From contig NC_042997.1 in NCBI RefSeq assembly GCF_006345805.1, positions 33,790,001-33,854,000 of the forward strand: a DNA stretch of 64,000 nucleotides, written 5' to 3'. A program made the position numbers and the translations under genes. Origin of the DNA: Octopus sinensis (taxonomy: Eukaryota). The notes beneath the pieces are model-generated. The model saw only the letters and a program-made list of their open reading frames with translations. It had not been told where the DNA came from and ran no database searches. Below are positions 2,960 through 50,832 of the stretch, piece after piece; positions within the stretch are counted from its first letter, which is position 1; each line of letters begins with the position of its first letter.

Positions 2960-3262
2960 GTGCTCTCAGAGGCATCATCATGCATAGAGCTGGCCAGGTC
3001 CACCAGTGCTCTCCATCACTGGCAGTCTCGTGCCAGCCCCTCTGCATCCTTCAAGGTGATGTCGAGCCTCTGTGAATCTTCACTAATCATGTCTAGCCAT
3101 CTGGTGTGGAGCTTGCCATTAGGCCTCTTCCAGCCCACAGCTGCTGTGTTGATTGAGAGTAAAGCCTTGGTAGAATGATCTAGTGGGAGACGGAGGACAT
3201 GTCCGTATCAGCGCATGTGATGGATAGCTATGAGGTAGGAGACTGCTGGCTGATACATGCAT
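2960..3262 (-). pseudogene. RTE-clade LINE ORF C-terminal relic
   Basis: Minus frame MYQPAVSYLIAIHHMR*YGHVLRLPLDHSTKALLSINTAAVGWKRPNGKLHTRWLDMISEDSQRLDITLKDAEGLARDCQ*WRALV matches the RTE W-GHV-R...WKRPRGRP-TRW...DR-W pattern, with in-frame stops. Confidence 0.8.
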
Positions 3263-3407
3263 GCAATTCTTTCTTGGAAGCATGATGGCACTATCTAATG
3301 TTCTTGAAACCATTAATCCTTTTAGCCAGGGTCTTTGAAAGGGGCCAGTTTTCTGTTCTATAGAATGTTTTTGGATATGTATTTGTGTATGTGTTTTATA
3401 TATATAT

Positions 3408-6866: not shown

Positions 6867-7168
6867 GGAGGCGCAATAGCCCAGTGGTTAGGGCAGTGGA
6901 CTTGCGATTGTAGGATCGTGGTTTTGATTCTCAGACCGGGCATTCTGAATGTTTATGGAGTGAAAACACCTAAAGCTCCATGAGGCTCCGGCAGGGGGTG
7001 GTGGTGATCCCTGCTGTACTCTTACGCCACAGCTTTCTCTCATTCTTTCTTCTGTTGGCCTTCTCACTTAGCCAGCAGGGTGACGTCATCTGAAGGCTAA
7101 AACAATGCAAAGTGCAATGTGACCAGCGATGTGGAACCACATCTGATAGCCTGGTCAATCACGGTGAT
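6867..7168 (+). mobile_element. SINE-C (~300 bp, tRNA-like head)
   Basis: ggaggcgcaatagcccagtggttagggcag (A box), gttttgattc (B-box-like), end ggtcaatcacggtgatatata; copies at 48516 and 50571. Confidence 0.85.
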
Positions 7169-7422: not shown

Positions 7423-7603
7423 TGCACCCACTACACTCGCGGAGTGGTTGGCGTTAGGAAGGGCATCCAGCTATAGAAACTCTGCCAGATCAGACTGGAG
7501 CCTGGTGCAGCCCCTGGCTTCCCAGACCCCGGTCGAACCGTCCAACCCGTGCTAGCGCGGAAAACGGGCGTTAAACGATGATGATGATGATGATGATGAT
7601 GAT
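7423..7603 (+). mobile_element. Family D 3' portion, young
   Basis: Near identical to 1327-1500, with a (GAT)n tail. Confidence 0.9.
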
Positions 7604-12245: not shown

Positions 12246-12560
12246 CTATCATCATCATCATTGTTCGACCGTGGTCGAGACAATGGAATTTACCATGCTA
12301 TGCCAAACTTCACGGTCCATCTTGGCATTACGGAGGTCCTGTTGCTGGATGCTTGTATCCCTGGAGATTACATCAGGGTAGGAGGGTGTGCGCCCTCTGG
12401 TATTGCGAGTAGATGGCTTCCAGAGGAGAAGAGTAGAAATTACTTCTTTTTCAGCTCTACAACAATGTCCAGCAAACTGGACTCTCCTACCTTTCACAAT
12501 AGATGACACAGGTGGTAGTTTCCCATATATTTGCATTTTGGTTGGATGGCGCCTCCACGA
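12246..12560 (-). pseudogene. RTE-type LINE 3' end with a (GAT)n tail
   Basis: IYGKLPPVSSIVKGRRVQFAGHCCRAEKEVISTLLLWKPSTRNTRGRTPSYPDVISRDT...DREVW...STTVEQ* followed by tgatgatgat. Confidence 0.85.
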
Positions 12561-12734
12561 GAGATTTTGAGCTCTCATAAGATTTTGAGCTCTATACCCT
12601 AGCCTATCTTTTTCAATATGTATGCATATGTGTATGTTTACCTGCACGTATGTGTATATCTGTCTGTCTATCTGTCTAAGCAACTACTCTACCAACACAT
12701 GCAATTTGAACGACCTGTGCCATAACCTATGTTA

Positions 12735-34380: not shown

Positions 34381-34847
34381 CCCTTTAGTGTTTAAACTGG
34401 CCATACCAGGCCAAAATTGTCTTCCTGTTTTATTCTCAAACCAGCCAGCTCTGACCCCTCACACCTACCCTACAAAGTCATTCTAAAAATAAACAGAGAC
34501 ATCATCAATATCCCAGAGTTACAAGATGCTGAACAATTAATTTAAAATAATCGGTGGCACGTAAAAAGCACCATCCGACCGTGGCCGTTTGCCAGCCTCG
34601 TCTGGAACCTGTGCCAGGGGCACGTAAAAAGCACCCACTACACTCATGAAGTGGTTGGCGTTAAGAAGGGCATCCAGTCGTAGAAACATTGCCAGATCAG
34701 ACTGGGCCTGGTGCAGCCTTATGGCTTCCCAGACCCCAGTTGCACCGTCCAACCCATGCTAGCATGGAAAGCGGACGCTAAACGATGATGATGATGATGT
34801 AATTAAACAGGCTTTACATTTGACAGAGTAATCTGAATGATAAAGGG
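34381..34847. mobile_element. TTAA-type MITE interrupted by family D (34551-34799)
   Basis: TTAA-ccctttagtg ... taaaggg-TCAA; D copy inside. Confidence 0.7.
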
Positions 34848-36125: not shown

Positions 36126-36965
36126 TCTTCTCATTTTAAAGTAGTTAGTTCTTTTCTACACAAATTACATTATGTATTCGACATTAGAAACCTTGTGTTT
36201 CTATTTTGAACTGTTTGTTGCCTGCCAACAAAAGCTATGGCAAAATTAGCCTCATGTTTCACTCTGATATTCTTAATTCTGGACTACCCCACTCACCTGA
36301 ACCCTAAATATTTCTCTTTCTTTCCATTCTCATCGATTTTGAGGTATGTTGGTGAAAATTACCAAATTATTCAATTTTCTATATATTTCCCTATTGAAAC
36401 CAATTTTTTTTTTTTTAAAGAAACATCTTTAATCATTTGTGTTTATTTTTTCAGTTAACTCATTGTTGTCTTCATAACATCATCTCTTAACTTCATCAAT
36501 TATTTGTTTGTTGTAGCAATAGTCCAACACACCATTTCACCTTTTTTTTAGTAATTCCTTTTCTTTCCTTGATTCTATTTTATTACACATTATTTTTTTT
36601 TTTGTTACTGTGGTAATTATAAAAGTGCAACGGACAGATAACAAAAGCATTTGTCTTATTTATATCTGCATTTGTATGTGTGTGTGTGTGTGTGTGTGTC
36701 CATCCACTCCCTAGTACCACTGCAAACATGAAAAAAAATGAGTGTAAACTGATGACATTGGTGATGATGATAATATATCTTTATATAGACACAAATGCTA
36801 TGCGACACTCAATTTGAATGCATTTAATTTTAAAGGATAACTGTACAAAACAAAATGCGGAATATGACAAAACAATGTTCCAGTGAAATGCTGAAGAACT
36901 TTTCACATTTACTTGCCAACATACCACAACTATTATTAGCCCACAAATGCTCTTTCTTCTCTTTC

Positions 36966-37246
36966 TACTACTACTACTACAACCACCACCACCATGACCA
37001 CACCCACGACTCCCCACCCACACCCACGACCACCCACCATGACCACGAACCCCCACTACTACTACTAATACCACCACCACCACCACAACCACCACCACTA
37101 CCACCACCACCACCACACCACCACCACCACAACCACGACCCCCACTCCCCACAACTACTACTACCACTACCACCACCACCACCACCACGACCCCCCCACA
37201 ACCACGACCACAAACCCCCACTACTACTACTACTACTACCACCACC

Positions 37247-37299
<53 letters not shown>

Positions 37300-37320
37300 A
37301 CCACCACCACCACCACCACC

Positions 37321-37353
<33 letters not shown>
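36966..37353. repeat. Mosaic (CAC)n/(TAC)n triplet satellite
   Basis: Direct inspection; acaaccacgacccccc submotif recurs. Confidence 0.95.
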
Positions 37354-37984
37354 GTTTCCCTATTCTTTTTCACATCTTTGCCAATCCTTTTGTCCAATCC
37401 TTCTTTAACTCCAGAGTTTCTATGACTGGATTGTCTGCCTTTCACTGACCTTCACTTATATATATATATGTATGTGTCTATATAAGTCTCTATTGACCAA
37501 ATCCACACACTTGCCCAGTAGAACTGAACCTGAAACCATGTGGTTGAGAAGAAGCCAGATTCTTACCACACAAACCACACCTGTGCCTATATATATATAT
37601 ATGTGTGTATATAATTTACATACATAGTCACACGCTTGCACACCCATCCACCCACCCACCCACCCACACAGACACACACACAAAACATATGTCAAAATTT
37701 AGCAAGCTAATTGATATCTCAGGAAATTATAACAACTAAGATAAATTAAATCAAAAAACAAAAAAAGAAAAAAGTAGTAGAGAAACAGTATTGAACAGAA
37801 ACAGTCATAACTATCATTGAAATAGTTCCTTTGCATTGGAAACTCATAGTTCACCACTTTTCAATTCCCATTGTGACAAAAAAAAAAACAAAACATTACA
37901 TTATTACGTAAAAAAAAACAAGGGACGGAGAGAAGAACAGAGAAATAGAAATAAATTTTTTCTTATACAGAAAAGGTATACATT

Positions 37985-38211
37985 TACACACACACACACA
38001 CACACATTCATGTGTCTATGTATTTGTGCACACATACACACACACACACACACATTCATGTGTTTATGTATTTGTGCACACATACACACACACACACATT
38101 CATGTGTCTATGTATTTGTGCACACATACACACACACACACATTCATGTGTTTATGTATTCTTTGCACACATATACACACACACACACATTCATGTGTCT
38201 ATGTATTTGTG

Positions 38212-38243
<32 letters not shown>

Positions 38244-38555
38244 TTCATGTGTTTATGTATTTGTGCACACATACACACACACACACACACACACATGTGT
38301 TTATGTATTTGTGCACACATACACACACACACATTCATGTGTTTATGTATTTGTGCACACATACACACACACACACCACATTTATGTGTTTATGTATTTG
38401 TGCACACATACACACACACACACACATTCATGTGTTTATGTATTTGTGCACACATACACACACACCACACACACACACACACATTTATGTGTCTATGTAT
38501 TTGTGCACACATACACACACACACACACACACATTCATGTGTTTATGTATTTGTG

Positions 38556-38600
<45 letters not shown>

Positions 38601-38745
38601 TTATGTGTCTATGTATTTGTGCACACATACACACACACACACACAACACATTTATGTGTCTATGTATTTGTGCACACATACACACACACACACACACACA
38701 CATTCATGTGTTTATGTATTTGTGCACACATACACATACACACAC
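37985..38745. repeat. Minisatellite: 15 copies of a ~32-bp core separated by variable (CA)n
   Basis: Core cattYatgtgtYtatgtatttgtgcacacata counted 15 times. Confidence 0.95.
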
Positions 38746-38904
38746 GCGCGCGCAAGCGTTCACGCGTTCGAACACATGTGTGCACATAGGCATATTTTCA
38801 CAACACCTAGACATTTATGCCTATAAGTGAATTAATAAGGTAAAAATACAATTTTTTTACTTTTACGTGTTCCTGTCTACTGAGAAGAACTATTTTGGCA
38901 TTTG

Positions 38905-39409
38905 TCCAACCATCACACTGCTACCACCACCACCAGCAACAACACCACCACTTACATTATCACCACCAGCATTAACAGAGACATACTACAGCAACAACAA
39001 CTCCTACTACTACTACTACTACCACCACCACCACGACTACTACTACTACTACTACAACCACCACGACCACAACCACGACCCTCCCCACCACGACACCCCA
39101 CCTACAACCATGACCACAAATCCCCAATACTACTACTACTACCACCACCACCACCATCACTACCACCACCACCACCACCACTACCACCACCACCACCACC
39201 ACCACCACCACCACTACCACTACCACCACCACCACAACCACGACCCCCACAAACCCCCACCACTACTACTACTACCACCACCACCACAACCACGACCCCC
39301 CCACTACTACTACCACTACCACCACCACCACCACAACCACGACCACAACCCCCCGCAACCACGACCACAAACCCCCACTACTACTACTACTACCACCACC
39401 ACCACCACG

Positions 39410-39462
<53 letters not shown>

Positions 39463-39500
39463 CACCACCACGACTATTACTACTACTACTACTACTACTA
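38905..39500. repeat. Mosaic (CAC)n/(TAC)n triplet satellite related to 36966-37353
   Basis: Same submotifs in similar order. Confidence 0.95.
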
Positions 39501-39989
39501 ATGGTAGTAGCGTTTAGTTTCTTCTTCTGTAGTATAACTTGTCATTTCAGTCTCTTAGTTTTCAACAATCACAGCATTAGGCCTTTGACACTTGTCTCTA
39601 TCAATCATCTCCTCATCCTCCTCATCCTCCTCGTCCTTCTTCTTCTTCTTCTTCTTCTTCTTCTTTTCCTTCTTCTTGTCCTCAGCAAAGCAAAATAAAT
39701 TCCCCCCCTCTCCTCCTCCTTTCACTTCCACCTATGCTCTCTCTCTCTGTCTGTACCTCTCTTCTCAACCACTTTTTCCTGTTTCACATCTCACCTTGTA
39801 AAACTATATAAGCAACAAGACCATCACCAACAATGACAACAACAACAACAACAACAAAAATGTTACCATTCCTTGACTACTGAAAAGGAAAGAAAAATTT
39901 GTTTCCCCCCCTCATATTTAAAAGAAGCCCTCCACGCTAGTGGATAGATCTTAACAAAATTCTGTAGTTTATCTTTTCTGACATTCTAT

Positions 39990-40112
39990 TTGTCTCTGTT
40001 TCTATGCATATATGTGTGTGTGTGTGTGTGTTTATATATATATATATATATATATATGCTTATGTGTGTATTTGTACGAATGTGTGCGCTGTGTTTGTAT
40101 ATATATATATAC

Positions 40113-40149
<37 letters not shown>

Positions 40150-40259
40150 ATGTATATATATATATACATACATATATATATATATACATAATGTATATAT
40201 ATATATATATATACATACATATATATATATATATATATATGTATATAGATACATATATA

Positions 40260-40334
<75 letters not shown>

Positions 40335-40390
40335 TATATACATATATACATATATATATACATATTATATACATATATACATATATATAC

Positions 40391-40447
<57 letters not shown>

Positions 40448-40472
40448 CACCACACACACACACATACACACA
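39990..40472. repeat. (TA)n/(TACA)n low-complexity block
   Basis: Direct inspection. Confidence 0.95.
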
Positions 40473-40948
40473 CTAAAATTCAATTTATATCATTTGGCTG
40501 ATCACTGGTTCACTGCATTTCTGATATCAAAAATGATAAGGGAGTCTTTGTACAACTTGGGTGGAATACATACCACAGGGTAGTTTTGTTCAAAAAGCTC
40601 TCCTTTATCGGTTTTTCTCACCTAAGTGTACAACAATTGCTGATATATATCAGTTAAAGACCCCCCCCACACACACACGCATGCATGCATGCATACACAC
40701 GTGCACACACATACACACACACTCAAATTAGATAAATGCATATGAATCTAGGCAGTGCAATTTCAGTTCATTGAAGTAAGATATTCAATTGCAGAGAATG
40801 CATAATGTCTCCACAGGTAGATTATCAAACGGGGGAGAACGGGCATCAAAAACACCACAGAAAAAAAATAAGGTATATTTACCTTCCCCCCAACATTATT
40901 ATTTTCGTTGTTATTATTATTATTATCATTATTATTATTATTATTATT

Positions 40949-44839: not shown

Positions 44840-44867
44840 TAATAATGATAGTAATAATAATAATATT

Positions 44868-46475
44868 ACCTGTGAACTTGCGTAAATACATATTTACCTG
44901 TGAACTTGCGTGTGTAATCTGGGAATGCATACAACGAGCTTCTCTGCCCTAGGTGTACGGAAAACACTCGGCGAGAAACAGAAGAATTTGAAGAAGAAGG
45001 AAAAAACATAATAATAATAATAATAATAATAATACCTGTGAACTTGCGTAAATACATATTTACCTGTGAATTTGCGTGTGTAATCTGGGAATGCATACAA
45101 TGAGCTTCTCTGCCTAGTGTACGGAAAACAACTCGGCGAGAAACAGAAGAAAATTTGAAGAAAGAAGGAAAAAACATATAATAATATAATATTACCTGTG
45201 AACTTGCGTAAATACATATTTACCTGTGAATTTGCGTGTGTAATCTGGGAATGCATACAATGAGCTTCTCTGCCCTAGGTGTACGGAAAACACTCGGCGA
45301 GAAACAGAAGAAAATTTGAAGAAAGAAGGAAAAAACATAATAATAATAATAATATTACCTGTGAACTTGCGTAAATACATATTTACCTGTGAATTTGCGT
45401 GTGTAATCTGGGAATGCATACAATGAGCTTCTCTGCCCTAGGTGTACGGAAAACACTCGGCGAGAAACAGAAGAAAATTTGAAGAAGAAGGAAAAACAAT
45501 AATAATACTAATAATAAAAAATAATACCTGTGAACTTGCGTAAATACATATTTACCTGTGAATTTGCGTGTGTACTCTGGGAATGCATACAATGAGCTTT
45601 CTCGCTGCCCTAGGTGTACGGAAACACTCGGCGAGAAACGGAAGAAAATTTGAAGAAAGAAGGAAAAAACATAATAATAATAATAATATTAACCTGTGAA
45701 CTTGCGTACGTTAACATATTTACCTGTGAATTTGCGTGTGTAATCTGGGAATGCATACAATGAGCTTCTCTGCCCTAGGTGTACGAACACTCGGCGAGAA
45801 ACAGAAGAAATTTGAAGAAAGACGAAAAAACATAATAATAATAATAATATTACCTGTGAACTTGCGAAATACATCGTTACCTGTGAATTTGCGTGTGTAA
45901 TCTGGGAATGCATACAATGAGCTTCTCTCCCTAGTGTATCGAAAACACTCGGCGAGAAACAGAAGAAAATTTGAAGAAAGAAGGAAAAAACATAATAATA
46001 ATAATAATAATAATAATACCTGTGAACTTGCGTAAATACATATTTACCTGTGAATTTGCGTGTGTAATCTGGGAATGCATACAATGAGCTTCTCTGCCCT
46101 AGGTGTACGGAAAACACTCGGCGAGAAACGGAAGAAAATTTGAAGAAAGAAGGAAAAAACATAATAATAATAATATTACCTGTGAACTCCGTAAATACAT
46201 ATTACCTGTGAATTTGCGTGTGTAATCTGGGAATGCATACAATGAGCTTCTCTGCCCTAGGTGTACGGAAAACACTCGGCGAGAAACAGAAGAAAATTTG
46301 AAGAAAGAAGGAAAAAACATAATAATAATAATAATATTACCTGTGAACTTGCGTAAATACATATTTACCTGTGAATTTGCGTGTGTAATCTGGGAATGCA
46401 TACAATGAGCTTCTCTGCCCTAGGTGTACGGAAAACACTCGGCGAGAAACGGAAGAAAATTTGAAGAAAGAAGGG
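44868..46475. repeat. Tandem array of 10 units (~160-169 bp) separated by variable (AAT)n
   Basis: Unit starts 44868, 45034, 45194, 45357, 45526, 45692, 45852, 46018, 46178, 46339. Confidence 0.97.
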
Positions 46476-46845
46476 AAAAAAGAAAAAAAAAATGATGATA
46501 AATAAATAAGTATATCAGAATGGGGTGAGCAGGAATGAGGGTGGTGGTGTATTTGTGGAGGTAGCAGGACTTTGAGAAGACATCAATGAAATGGGTGAAT
46601 CTTGATGGCAAATCGAAGACAGGTTGAAGGGAAGAAGTAGAAGAAGAAGGTATGTACGGAAATGAGAAGAAAGCATGGGAAGGTGAATAAAAGTATGGGA
46701 AGAAGTGAAGCCGATGAGAGGGTGAGGTTTGAAAGTAGTCTGGGGCCAACAGAAGCTCTAAAGTTGATGTGTATCTCACCTTGAAAATATAGTGCTCAGG
46801 TGCCATAAAAACAACAACAACAACAACAACAATAATAATAATATT

Positions 46846-48515: not shown

Positions 48516-48804
48516 GGAGGTGCAATGGCCCAGTGGTTAGGGCAGCGGACTCACGGTCGTAGGATCGCGGTTTCGATTCCCAGACTGGGTGTTGTGTGCG
48601 TTTATTGAGCGAAAACACCTAAAAGCTCGACGACGCTCCGGCAGGGGGTGGTGATCCCTGCTGTACTCTTTCACTACTCCTTCTCTCACTCTTTCATCTG
48701 TTGGGCTTCTCGCTTAGCCAGCGGCGTGGCGTCATTCGAAGGCTTAAACAATGCGAACGCATTGTGACCAGCGATGTGTAGCAACATCCGATGGTCTGGT
48801 TGGT

Positions 48805-48810
<6 letters not shown>
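48516..48810 (+). mobile_element. SINE-C
   Basis: A box tggcccagtggtt, B box gtttcgattccc. Confidence 0.9.
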
Positions 48811-48850
<40 letters not shown>

Positions 48851-49539: not shown

Positions 49540-49953
49540 ACCACCATCTCTCCCCCCCCCCATCTTTTGCACTCTTACCTGCTTGCTCTCTTCCACTCTT
49601 TCATTTTTCATCTCTCTCTCTTTTGCTCTCTCTCTCTCTGGCTGGTAACCATGTGTCTCCTCTACAGCAAGAAACCTGTTTTTATCCCTCTGTCACATTC
49701 TAACCTGTCATCACTTGGCACAAGGCCACCTCCTTCAGTGCCCCCCCTCCTTTCAAAGGATCTTATTTGGTGACCCCCACCAGTGCTGGTGCATCCAGTC
49801 CAGTCCACACTATAAAGTGGTTGGTGTATGGAAGGGCATCCAGCTGTAACACCCATGCCAAAACAGACGGTGAAGTCTGGTGCTGTTTTCTACCTTGCCA
49901 GCCCCTGTGAAACCATCCATCCCATGCCAGCATGGAAAATTGGACATTAAATG

Positions 49954-49955
<2 letters not shown>
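49540..49955 (+). mobile_element. RTE 3' UTR relic with a D-type tail
   Basis: cctctacagcaagaaacctgtt...ggaagggcatccagctgtaac...ccatgccagcatggaaaattggacattaaatgat. Confidence 0.65.
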
Positions 49956-50000
<45 letters not shown>

Positions 50001-50034
50001 GAAAGAATGGAGTTGAACGACGATTTAACAAAAT

Positions 50035-50132
50035 TCCTTTATTCTTGACATATGTTTCGAAGACTGCATATTCTTAATTCTGAAGGAATAAAGGGTGCAT
50101 TATGCCACCTTCTCATCAGGAAAGACAAGGAA
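50035..50132 (-). ncRNA. Hammerhead ribozyme, antisense-arm copy (G1.1 mutated to A)
   Basis: Reverse complement reads ttccttgtctttcCTGATGAgaagg...cttcGAAACatatGTCaaga; stem I closing pair lost. Confidence 0.65.
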
Positions 50133-50240
50133 CTTATGTCAGCATCATGACGAACAAAAACTTTTAGATGACTGCCCACACGGAGTCCATAGTGTGGGCA
50201 GTCATCTAAAAGTTTTTGTTCGTCATGATGCTGACATAAG

Positions 50241-50339
50241 TTCCTTGTCTTTCCTGATGAGAAGGCAGCATAATGCACCCTTTATTCCCTCGGAATTAAG
50301 AATATGCAGTCTTCGAAACATATGTCGAGAATATAGGAA
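50241..50339 (+). ncRNA. Minimal type-I hammerhead ribozyme (predicted cleavage after GUC 50324-50326)
   Basis: Stem I TTTC/GAGA plus TTCCT/AGGAA; core CTGATGA 50254-60; stem II GAAGGCAGCATA/TATGCAGTCTTC; GAAA 50315-18; stem III AC-ATAT-GT with a palindromic loop. Confidence 0.8.
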
Positions 50340-50525
50340 TTTTGTTAAATCGTCGTTCGACTCCATTCTTTCATTTATTTATAGTAAAATAAACACACAA
50401 ATTTCCACACAAAAGCACGTGATCTCTGCCCTTGGCATGTAGCTTCAACCGTGTTTTCTGACGTGAATTTGCTACCCGGGTATCGGTTAACCGAATTATC
50501 CATACTAGGATAATTCATTCAACTA

Positions 50526-50565
<40 letters not shown>

Positions 50566-50570
50566 TTGTC

Positions 50571-50832
50571 AGAGGCGCAATGGCCCAGTGGTTGGGGCAG
50601 CGGACTCGAGTGTTTATTGAGCAAAGACACCTAAAAGCTCCATGAAGCTCCAGCAGGGGGTGGTGATCCCTGCTGTACTCTTTCAGCACCATTTCTCTCA
50701 CTCTTTCTTCTGTTGGCCTGCTCGCTTAGCCAGCGGGGTGACATCATTCGAAGGCTAAAACAATGCGAACGCATTGTGACCAGTGATGTGTAGCAACATC
50801 TGATGGTCTGGTCGGTCACGTGATCACATGAT
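50571..50832 (+). mobile_element. SINE-C with a deletion across the B-box region
   Basis: Head tggcccagtggttggggcagcggactcg joined directly to agtgtttattgagc. Confidence 0.85.

What the first reader, a model, noticed from the sequence alone, without database searches (positions are those of the whole stretch)
49990..50527. Intact hammerhead ribozyme inside a 192-bp-arm foldback inserted in (TA)n
Seen: arms 96% identical with a 10-nt loop. The right arm holds a complete minimal type-I hammerhead: CUGAUGA, a long stem II, GAAA, AC-AUAU-GU stem III, a GUC site and a two-part stem I. All 7 arm mismatches lie outside the inner 74 bp. Three are CpG-type changes in the left copy, one removing the C2.1-G1.1 pair, so only the right copy looks fully competent. 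Known: Penelope-like element pseudo-LTRs encode such minimal hammerheads (Cervera and de la Pena 2014), and PLE insertions often carry an inverted truncated pLTR. Inference: a ~540-bp ORF-less, TA-targeting ribozyme element. A read-through transcript could fold either as ribozyme or as a long duplex that masks it and invites ADAR editing, a potential switch on host pre-mRNA cleavage.
Basis: partly seen in the sequence, partly recalled or inferred. Interest (0 to 1): 0.85.

Follow-up and report, generated by a model that had tools for sequence, protein, structure and literature searches.

The report
Fossil hammerhead ribozyme in retroelement foldback
A real but ordinary relic: a short, gene-less mobile-element insertion next to a (TA)n repeat. 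It carries two head-to-head copies of a hammerhead self-cleaving RNA motif of the kind known from Penelope-like retroelements, and it is almost certainly inactive here.

Summary
The arms are 49990-50181 and 50192-50383, with 7 differences in 192 bp and a 10-nt spacer. The right arm carries a complete type-I hammerhead with its cut after C50326. The left copy has lost the G1.1-C2.1 pair.

The motif is not chance. My descriptor finds it once in the window. It finds 0.033 hits per shuffled window, 0.0008 when G10.1-C11.1 is required, and none with a palindromic helix III. Rfam Hammerhead_1 is the only family hit on the 117-nt stretch: 19.9 bits against a gathering score of 34, the shortfall going with a 50-nt insertion in helix II. 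The left copy scores 13.7 bits.

The architecture fits published Penelope-like element (PLE) insertions and retrozyme-type monomers: no ORF, (TA)n context, an inverted copy on the opposite strand, a 2-bp palindromic helix III, and an AC-rich stem-loop 72-92 nt 3' of the cut. Five of the seven differences are CpG decay, so this is an old insertion and not an assembly artefact.

No PLE ORF or second copy could be reached, so PLE parentage is inferred. The proposed ADAR/ribozyme switch is unsupported: each strand has one sense copy, helix III needs a dimer, and the foldback duplex (-357 kcal/mol) swamps the ribozyme fold (-19 kcal/mol).

Verdict: new member of a known kind, modest interest.

The parts
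49954..49993 (.). Left (TA)n tract, imperfect from 49954 and pure over 49963-49993. It grows out of the (GAT)n-type tail of a SINE that ends at 49953.
49990..50181 (-). Left arm: an inverted partial copy of the element, equivalent to 50192-50383. Its outer end merges into (TA)n through a shared TATA.
50041..50125 (-). Degenerate hammerhead copy. G1.1 has become A (a C-to-T change at 50046 on the + strand), which breaks the 1.1-2.1 pair.
   Evidence: Rfam RF00163 13.7 bits, E=1; fails the descriptor
50182..50191 (.). 10-nt spacer GGAGTCCATA between the arms.
50192..50383 (+). Right arm: the sense copy of the element's 5' part.
50238..50342 (+). Type-I hammerhead ribozyme motif: stem I 50238-50253 / 50327-50342; core CUGAUGA 50254-50260; helix II 50261-50314 (54 nt, about 19 bp); GAAA 50315-50318; helix III A15.1-C15.2/AUAU/G16.2-U16.1 at 50318-50325 (the 8-nt palindrome ACAUAUGU); predicted cut after C17 = 50326.
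50384..50527 (+). Asymmetric 'tail', present only on the right side. It holds an AC-rich tract (50391-50419) that forms the 5' strand of a stem-loop (50398-50471), and a 9-bp hairpin at 50493-50516. It is uncertain whether all of it, only its first 30-40 nt, or none of it belongs to the insertion.
   Evidence: fold z-score -2.64 on + against -1.74 on -; compared with PMC11167929
50529..50563 (.). Right (TA)n tract, immediately upstream of a tRNA-like SINE at 50566-50825.

Best explanation
This is a dead retro-insertion derived from the hammerhead-bearing terminal region of a Penelope-like element (PLE): either the pLTR/ORF-junction region itself or a PLE-dependent non-autonomous monomer of the 'non-LTR retrozyme' type.

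One sense copy runs from 50192 to at least 50383, possibly to about 50420 or to 50527. A head-to-head inverted partial copy occupies 49990-50181. Both were laid down at integration beside or inside a (TA)n microsatellite. The inverted copy arose either because the PLE enzyme nicks and primes on both target strands, or because the first cDNA strand snapped back and copied itself.

In the parent element the hammerhead, which has a short palindromic helix III, cuts multimeric transcripts as a dimer or with help from the element's protein. At this locus it is a fossil. There is one sense copy per strand, it is masked by a roughly 190-bp duplex, and the sequence has been decaying neutrally, mostly at CpGs.

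Shown: the anatomy, the non-random hammerhead motif, the absence of an ORF, and the CpG-type decay. Inferred: PLE parentage, the mode of origin of the inverted copy, and inactivity.
For: - The hammerhead motif is unique in the window and far above chance (0.033 hits per shuffled window relaxed, 0.0008 with G10.1-C11.1, 0 of 2574 with a palindromic helix III).
- RF00163 is the only Rfam hit on 117 nt, aligned end to end with a 50-nt helix II insertion. The left copy is weaker.
- The MFE fold keeps stems I and II.
- No ORF homologue or domain was found, and there is no other copy in the window.
- The element abuts (TA)n, which covers only 2.3% of the window.
- Differences between the arms are 6 transitions and 1 transversion with no indels; 5 of 7 are CpG decay. 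This is real divergence, JC 0.037 between the arms.
- Literature: PLE hammerheads lie in pLTRs, mostly as solo truncated copies, and some occur as pairs 100-700 bp apart on opposite strands. G10.1-C11.1 and a palindromic 15.2-16.2/loop 3 are family hallmarks (PMC4209133).
- PLE insertions often carry an adjacent inverted 5'-truncated copy and a one-sided tail. Naiads prefer (TA)n targets, and a microsatellite bias was proposed for Neptune (PMC8557442).
- The PLE protein cuts AT-rich DNA on both strands, extends both, and starts reverse transcription in an AC-rich stem-loop about 85-92 nt 3' of the hammerhead cut (PMC11167929). Here an AC-rich tract that forms a stem-loop lies 72-92 nt 3' of the cut, just where the left copy stops.
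- Retrozyme monomers related to pLTRs average about 300 bp (bioRxiv 10.64898/2026.07.22.740005).
Against: - No RT/GIY-YIG ORF, no direct pLTR repeat and no second family member could be found in the window or in any collection reachable here.
- The Rfam score is below gathering (19.9 against 34).
- The unpaired nucleotide between A9 and G10.1 that is typical of PLE min-hammerheads is absent.
- Helix II (54 nt) is much longer than the 6-8 bp described for PLE min-hammerheads.
- The right-hand asymmetry is 144 bp if the insertion ends at 50527, not the published 30-40 bp tail.
- The two copies share exactly the same inner end, which the simple 'independently 5'-truncated inverted copy' picture does not predict.
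- The source organism was not verified.
Confidence: 0.6

Rival explanations
1. It is a foldback (MITE-like) DNA transposon, 49994-50379, flanked by a TA or TATA target duplication. The 144 bp to its right is ordinary host DNA. The hammerhead is either a coincidence or a captured retroelement fragment.
For: The palindrome is flanked by TATA on both sides, 49990-49993 and 50380-50383. Nearly the whole unit is inverted repeat with a 10-nt centre. The hairpin tip resembles a palindromic miRNA-precursor model (RF03633, 52 bits, below gathering). Tc1-mariner elements and MITEs are annotated in Octopus vulgaris, my unverified guess at the source group (PMC13282606).
Against: A complete hammerhead arising by chance inside 384 nt of arm has a probability of roughly 1e-4 or less (scaled). 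The termini (AAATAAATGAAAG...) do not resemble Tc1/mariner ends (from general knowledge). The tail is structured on the sense strand. The TATA may simply be the microsatellite. No second copy is available to show precise ends.
Confidence: 0.12
2. A solo hammerhead-bearing retro-insertion (50192-50527) was there first. Its first 192 bp were later duplicated in inverted orientation by a DNA-level event: fork template switching, or fold-back repair of a break at the unstable (TA)n.
For: There is perfect symmetry around a 10-nt spacer. Microsatellite (TA)n tracts are fragile (general knowledge). The arms' divergence only dates the duplication, not the insertion.
Against: The duplicated segment would have to end exactly at the (TA)n/TATA junction. 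Inverted adjacent copies are already a documented product of PLE integration, so no extra event is needed.
Confidence: 0.15
3. This is the first reader's functional reading: a regulated ribozyme element in which read-through RNA toggles between an active hammerhead and an ADAR-edited duplex, controlling cleavage of a host pre-mRNA.
For: The right copy's core and helices are intact. Long duplex RNA is an ADAR substrate (general knowledge).
Against: The duplex is -357 kcal/mol against -18.8 for the ribozyme fold, and the antisense arm is made first in either transcription direction. The 2-bp helix III needs a second sense copy, which a single transcript lacks; single min-hammerheads showed no cleavage in vitro. 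The sequence decays at CpGs like neutral DNA. There is no evidence of a host gene or of transcription, and no conservation data.
Confidence: 0.03
4. It is not a real feature: either a chance hammerhead-like string or a palindromic assembly artefact.
For: Rfam is below gathering and silent in the whole-window scan. At the relaxed descriptor's chance rate of 0.033 hits per 64 kb, a genome of gigabase size would hold many chance hits.
Against: The strict features are essentially never met in shuffles, and the motif sits inside an obvious insertion. The arms differ by 7 substitutions, mostly at CpGs, with no indels. That is not what a chimeric-read or fold-back artefact gives.
Confidence: 0.03

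Closest known systems
Hammerhead ribozymes of Penelope-like element pseudo-LTRs (Cervera & de la Pena 2014, PMC4209133)
   Same: Type-I topology, a full conserved core, G10.1-C11.1, an enlarged helix II, a short proximal helix I, and a palindromic 15.2-16.2 plus loop 3 that implies action as a dimer. Most genomic copies are solo truncated fragments, and pairs occur on opposite strands 100-700 bp apart; here the two cut sites are 279 bp apart.
   Different: There is no unpaired nucleotide between A9 and G10.1. Helix II is 54 nt (about 19 bp with internal loops) against 6-8 bp. Helix III keeps 2 bp and a 4-nt loop, like the 'less atypical' or canonical metazoan variants. No PLE ORF is linked to it here.
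Metazoan non-LTR retrozymes and their monomers (Cervera & de la Pena 2020, PMC7229834; Li et al. 2026 preprint)
   Same: A short (about 300 bp), low-GC, non-coding unit with one type-I hammerhead with a 1-2 bp palindromic helix III, thought to be mobilised by PLEs. Dispersed monomers are known.
   Different: This is not a tandem array. The unit does not run from cut site to cut site. It is arranged as an inverted pair, and there is no evidence of circular RNA.
PLE insertion architecture and integration mechanism (Craig et al. 2021, PMC8557442; Frangieh et al. 2024, PMC11167929)
   Same: An AT-rich or (TA)n target, an adjacent inverted copy, a one-sided extra segment, and an AC-rich stem-loop shortly 3' of the ribozyme.
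   Different: The published tail is 30-40 bp, whereas the asymmetry here is 144 bp unless the insertion ends near 50420. Both copies end at the same inner point. Naiads, the clade with the documented (TA)n bias, lack canonical hammerheads.
Rfam RF00163 Hammerhead_1
   Same: The full-length alignment to the model places stems I, II and III and the core exactly as read by eye.
   Different: The score is 19.9 bits, below the gathering score of 34. The alignment carries a 50-nt insertion in helix II.

Membership tests
Hammerhead ribozyme, type I | Conserved core C3 U4 G5 A6 N7 G8 A9 / G12 A13 A14 / A15.1-U16.1 / H17 | tested here: met
   CUGAUGA at 50254-50260, GAAA at 50315-50318, U16.1 at 50325 and C17 at 50326
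Hammerhead ribozyme, type I | Three helices around the core, with helix I open and helices II and III capped | tested here: met
   Helix I is 4 bp, a 4x4 loop, then 8 bp. Helix II is about 19 bp. Helix III is 2 bp plus an AUAU loop.
Hammerhead ribozyme, type I | Score at or above the Rfam RF00163 gathering threshold | tested here: not met
   19.9 bits against 34 (E=0.009 on 117 nt). There was no hit in the whole-window gathering scan or in the 721-nt scan. The alignment carries a 50-nt helix II insertion.
Hammerhead ribozyme, type I | Self-cleavage after H17 | not testable with these tools
   Needs in vitro transcription, or mapping of 5'-OH and 2',3'-cyclic-phosphate RNA ends.
Hammerhead ribozyme, type I | Compensatory changes in the helices across family members | not testable with these tools
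   Only the two arms of one insertion are available. C50266-to-U keeps a G-U pair, but that is a single observation.
PLE-associated min-hammerhead (Cervera & de la Pena 2014) | G10.1-C11.1, and a palindromic 15.2-16.2 with loop 3 | tested here: met
   G50261-C50314; ACAUAUGU is an 8-nt palindrome.
PLE-associated min-hammerhead (Cervera & de la Pena 2014) | An unpaired nucleotide between A9 and G10.1 | tested here: not met
   G10.1 follows A9 directly.
Penelope-like element | An ORF with a telomerase-like RT and a GIY-YIG endonuclease | tested here: not met
   The element has no such ORF. The window's ORF lists show nothing that looks like one, but only five of those ORFs were scanned against Pfam. 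A truncated or non-autonomous copy need not carry the ORF.
Penelope-like element | Direct pseudo-LTRs from a partial tandem arrangement | tested here: not met
   There is no direct repeat of the unit in the window.
Penelope-like element | An adjacent inverted copy and a one-sided tail | tested here: inconclusive
   An inverted copy is present. The extra right-hand segment is 144 bp, or about 35 bp if the insertion ends after the AC tract.
Penelope-like element | An AT-rich or microsatellite target | tested here: met
   The left end is fused to (TA)n. The right end is at (TA)n if the boundary is 50527. This is a single insertion only.
Non-LTR retrozyme | A head-to-tail tandem array of hammerhead-bearing units | tested here: not met
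   No tandem copy was found. At most it is a monomer derivative.
MITE / foldback DNA transposon | Many copies with fixed termini and target-site duplications | not testable with these tools
TATA is present on both sides of the palindrome, but it cannot be told apart from the microsatellite.

The most novel reading that the evidence does not exclude
The locus may represent a so far undescribed family, probably in a cephalopod, of hammerhead elements with a 54-nt helix II domain that integrate as near-perfect foldbacks. Their hairpin transcripts would act as double-stranded RNA, feeding small-RNA or ADAR pathways. These would silence or tune the parent PLE or retrozyme RNAs, or gate ribozyme activity by editing.
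Probability: 0.06. Interest if true: 0.6.

Novelty: new member of a known kind. Interest (0 to 1): 0.28.

Why it matters
This hammerhead falls below the Rfam gathering score, most likely because of its long helix II. Standard annotation would therefore miss it, although structure-aware reading finds it.

If the family is confirmed in the source genome, it would add a lineage to the catalogue of PLE and retrozyme hammerheads. The lineage is probably cephalopod; I found no paper in the library that describes octopus hammerheads.

It would also give a clean example of the head-to-head insertion product expected from a PLE enzyme that primes on both strands. It does not by itself open a new question.

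Tried and rejected
1. Relatives through proteins. The 115-aa reading frame across the element found no homologue in the 5.8-billion-protein search. It is not on record as a gene. The exhaustive HMMER search gave one hit, a 5841-aa repeat protein at 27% identity, which I judged spurious.

2. Relatives through DNA patterns.
- The gapped hammerhead pattern found nothing in metagenome or viral contigs.
- The 21-mer covering stem I and the core gave three mutually related metagenome contigs (L001-L003) that match over the 21-mer only, which is chance.
- The same 21-mer gave nothing in viral contigs.

3. Reaching the source genome through a LINE fragment in the window. The best proteins are only 54-75% identical, and the one long contig (L004) shares nothing else with the window. 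I abandoned this route.

4. Text search for the flanking SINE sequence and for mir-5882 found no papers. The organism therefore remains unverified. 'Cephalopod' is my recollection of the SINE sequence, not a test.

5. The mir-5882 hit on the hairpin tip (52 bits, gathering score 95, both strands) I read as a generic perfect-hairpin match and rejected as homology.

6. The RNAcofold dimer of 50235-50345 gave a stem II domain swap, not the extended helix III, so it was uninformative.

7. Gene conversion as the explanation for the mismatch-free inner 74 bp was rejected in favour of the CpG distribution.

8. The bacterial promoter and terminator scan is irrelevant to a eukaryotic window.

Full report
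**Observation**

The sequence is as described. The repeat finder reports one long inverted repeat centred on a 10-nt spacer. All seven are substitutions, six transitions and one transversion, with no indels.

In the sense register, the left copy carries CpG-to-CpA at the equivalents of 50292, 50327 and 50359. The adjacent pair 50266/50267 reads CA in the right copy and TG in the left. That is the signature of one ancestral CpG that decayed differently in each arm. Five of the seven differences are therefore CpG decay.

Seven of the eight inferred ancestral CpGs lie outside the inner 74 bp. This explains the clean inner segment without invoking conversion. The pattern also argues against a fold-back assembly artefact.

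**Is the hammerhead real?**

Read directly, the right arm has these parts:
- stem I 5' strand 50238-50253
- CUGAUGA 50254-50260
- a 54-nt helix II closed by G10.1-C11.1 (50261/50314)
- GAAA 50315-50318
- C15.2-AUAU-G16.2, U16.1, and C17 at 50326
- stem I 3' strand 50327-50342

I wrote a descriptor requiring CUGANGA, helix II of at least 4 bp, GAAA, helix III of at least 2 bp, UH, and helix I of at least 4 bp.
- It finds this site and nothing else on either strand of the 64-kb window.
- In 2574 dinucleotide-preserving shuffles of the window it finds 0.033 hits per window. With G10.1-C11.1 required the rate is 0.0008, and with a palindromic helix III it is zero.
- A second, PLE-style minimal descriptor also finds only this site.

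Rfam is silent at gathering thresholds and in a 721-nt E-value scan. When only 117 nt are given, Hammerhead_1 (RF00163) is the single hit among 4227 families. It scores 19.9 bits against a gathering score of 34, with E=0.009. The alignment runs end to end and places every element as read by eye, with a 50-nt insertion in helix II.

The left copy on the minus strand scores 13.7 bits, with the 1.1-2.1 pair flagged as broken. The minimum-free-energy fold of 50235-50345 keeps both parts of stem I and all of helix II. I conclude that the motif is an evolved hammerhead. It is not formally a member by Rfam's threshold.

**Anatomy and surroundings**

The window is eukaryotic, non-coding, and full of SINEs and microsatellites. 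There are no tRNA genes, and no ORF in the lists looks like a real coding sequence.
- To the left, a (GAT)n-tailed SINE ends at 49953 and runs into (AT)n.
- To the right, a (TA)n tract (50529-50563) immediately precedes a tRNA-like SINE. Its two other copies in the window are also preceded by (TA)n or (TG)n.
- Pure (TA)n of six or more units covers 2.3% of the window, so abutting it is not random.
- The element occurs once in the window.
- Its longest frame (115 aa) has no homologue and no domain.

The 144 bp between the palindrome and the right (TA)n exists on one side only. On the + strand it folds better than every one of 200 shuffles (z = -2.64). An AC-rich tract (50391-50419) forms one strand of a stem-loop, and there is a 9-bp hairpin near the end. 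The minus strand is less exceptional, at z = -1.74.

**Relatives**

None could be obtained. Protein-space and DNA-pattern searches of the public collections found nothing usable. An attempt to reach the source genome through a LINE fragment showed that the collections do not hold it. Family size, true boundaries, covariation and linkage to an autonomous element therefore remain untested.

**Comparison with the literature**

Cervera and de la Pena (PMC4209133) describe hammerheads in PLE pseudo-LTRs with four relevant traits:
- an enlarged helix II and a short helix I
- a conserved G10.1-C11.1
- a palindromic 15.2-16.2 and loop 3, implying action as dimers
- most copies are solo fragments, and some are pairs 100-700 bp apart on opposite strands

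Here the two cut sites are 279 bp apart on opposite strands. Their single-motif constructs did not cleave.

Craig et al. (PMC8557442) describe three further features:
- an inverted 5'-truncated copy next to many PLE insertions
- a 30-40 bp tail at one end
- (TA)n preference in Naiads, which lack canonical hammerheads, and a proposed microsatellite bias in Neptune, which has them

Frangieh et al. (PMC11167929) report four findings:
- a PLE protein cuts AT-rich DNA on both strands and extends both
- it starts reverse transcription in an AC-rich stem-loop about 85-92 nt 3' of the hammerhead cut
- the tail is the stretch between two start sites
- the ribozyme cleaved only when the protein was present

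In this locus the AC-rich tract lies 72-92 nt 3' of the cut and begins just where the left copy stops.

A 2026 preprint relates retrozyme monomers to pLTRs. If the window is from an octopus, which is my unverified recollection of the SINE sequences, Penelope elements are abundant and recently active there (PMC13282606). By that paper's calibration (JC 0.09 for about 25 My), the arms' JC distance of 0.037 would date the event to roughly 5 My ago.

**Most likely mechanism**

A short RNA carrying the hammerhead region of a PLE, or of a PLE-dependent non-autonomous unit, was reverse-transcribed at a nick in or beside (TA)n. The head-to-head copy arose at integration, in one of two ways:
- two cDNAs primed on the two target strands both ran to the same RNA 5' end, or
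- the first cDNA snapped back on itself.

The left copy's outer end coincides with a TATA in the element (50380-50383). That would allow joining to (TA)n by microhomology. These steps are inferred.

In the parent, the ribozyme would process multimeric transcripts as a dimer through the ACAUAUGU palindrome, or with protein help. At this locus it should be inert for three reasons:
- A transcript of either strand contains one sense and one antisense copy, so the dimer cannot form within one molecule.
- The antisense arm is synthesised first.
- The foldback is about -357 kcal/mol against -18.8 for the ribozyme-competent fold.

The CpG decay fits neutral evolution.

**Rivals**

- A MITE-like foldback DNA transposon with a TA duplication remains possible, because TATA flanks the palindrome. 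It would leave the hammerhead as a coincidence with a probability of roughly 1e-4 or less.
- A later DNA-level inverted duplication of a solo insertion cannot be excluded from one locus.
- Chance or artefact is unlikely for the reasons given.

**Verdict**

It is a new member of a known kind. The modest points of interest are the unusually long helix II, which hides it from Rfam, the very clean head-to-head structure, and a possibly undescribed host lineage.

Noticed in passing
window 50566-50825, 48517-48812, 6868-7168: Three copies of a tRNA-like SINE. All are preceded by (TA)n or (TG)n, and two are also followed by (TA)n. The copy next to the finding has a 43-bp internal deletion in its tRNA-like head. 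This is a second repeat family associated with TA microsatellites in the window.
   Followed up: partly
window 49807-49953 and about nine other sites (for example 1346-1467, 7443-7564, 34640-34770): A SINE family that normally ends in (GAT)n. In the copy left of the finding the tail has become (AT)n, which is the left-hand microsatellite of the insertion.
   Followed up: partly
window 44848-46481: A 163-bp satellite in about 10 tandem copies, 92% matching. The hammerhead descriptors find nothing in it.
   Followed up: partly
window 50148-50225, both strands: The tip of the foldback gives sub-threshold hits to the miRNA-precursor model mir-5882 (RF03633): 52 and 51 bits against a gathering score of 95. 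It shares UGCCCAC/GUGGGCA with the model. Most simply this reflects a 33-bp perfect hairpin, not homology. No literature on that family was found.
   Followed up: partly
window 50256-50442: The AUG inside the CUGAUGA box opens a 61-codon frame that ends at TAG 50440; the stop-to-stop frame is 50092-50439. In the anole PLE the ORF also starts at the ribozyme (PMC11167929). Here no homologue or domain was found, so this may be chance.
   Followed up: partly
window 50266-50267 against 50106-50107: The adjacent differences, CA in one arm and TG in the other, imply one ancestral CpG that decayed independently in the two arms. Together with three further CpG losses, this suggests the element was CpG-methylated in the germ line.
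   Followed up: yes
window 12261-12683 (-) and about 3100-3290 (+): C-terminal fragments that look like RTE-type LINE reverse transcriptase by eye; Pfam found no RT domain in either. The best database proteins for the 12261-12683 fragment are 54-75% identical and come mostly from ENA assemblies; the contig examined shares nothing else with the window.
   Followed up: partly
L001 4866-4886, L002 3248-3268, L003 309-329: Three mutually related metagenome contigs contain the exact 21-mer TTCCTTGTCTTTCCTGATGAG, followed by a short GGTACC hairpin. There is no further similarity and no GAAA box, so I judged it a chance match.
   Followed up: yes
window 36780-40600: About 4 kb that, judged from the composition of the ORF translations (long V/G, H/Y/T/P and I/Y runs), is low-complexity or microsatellite DNA and produces long spurious ORFs. 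It was not examined further.
   Followed up: no
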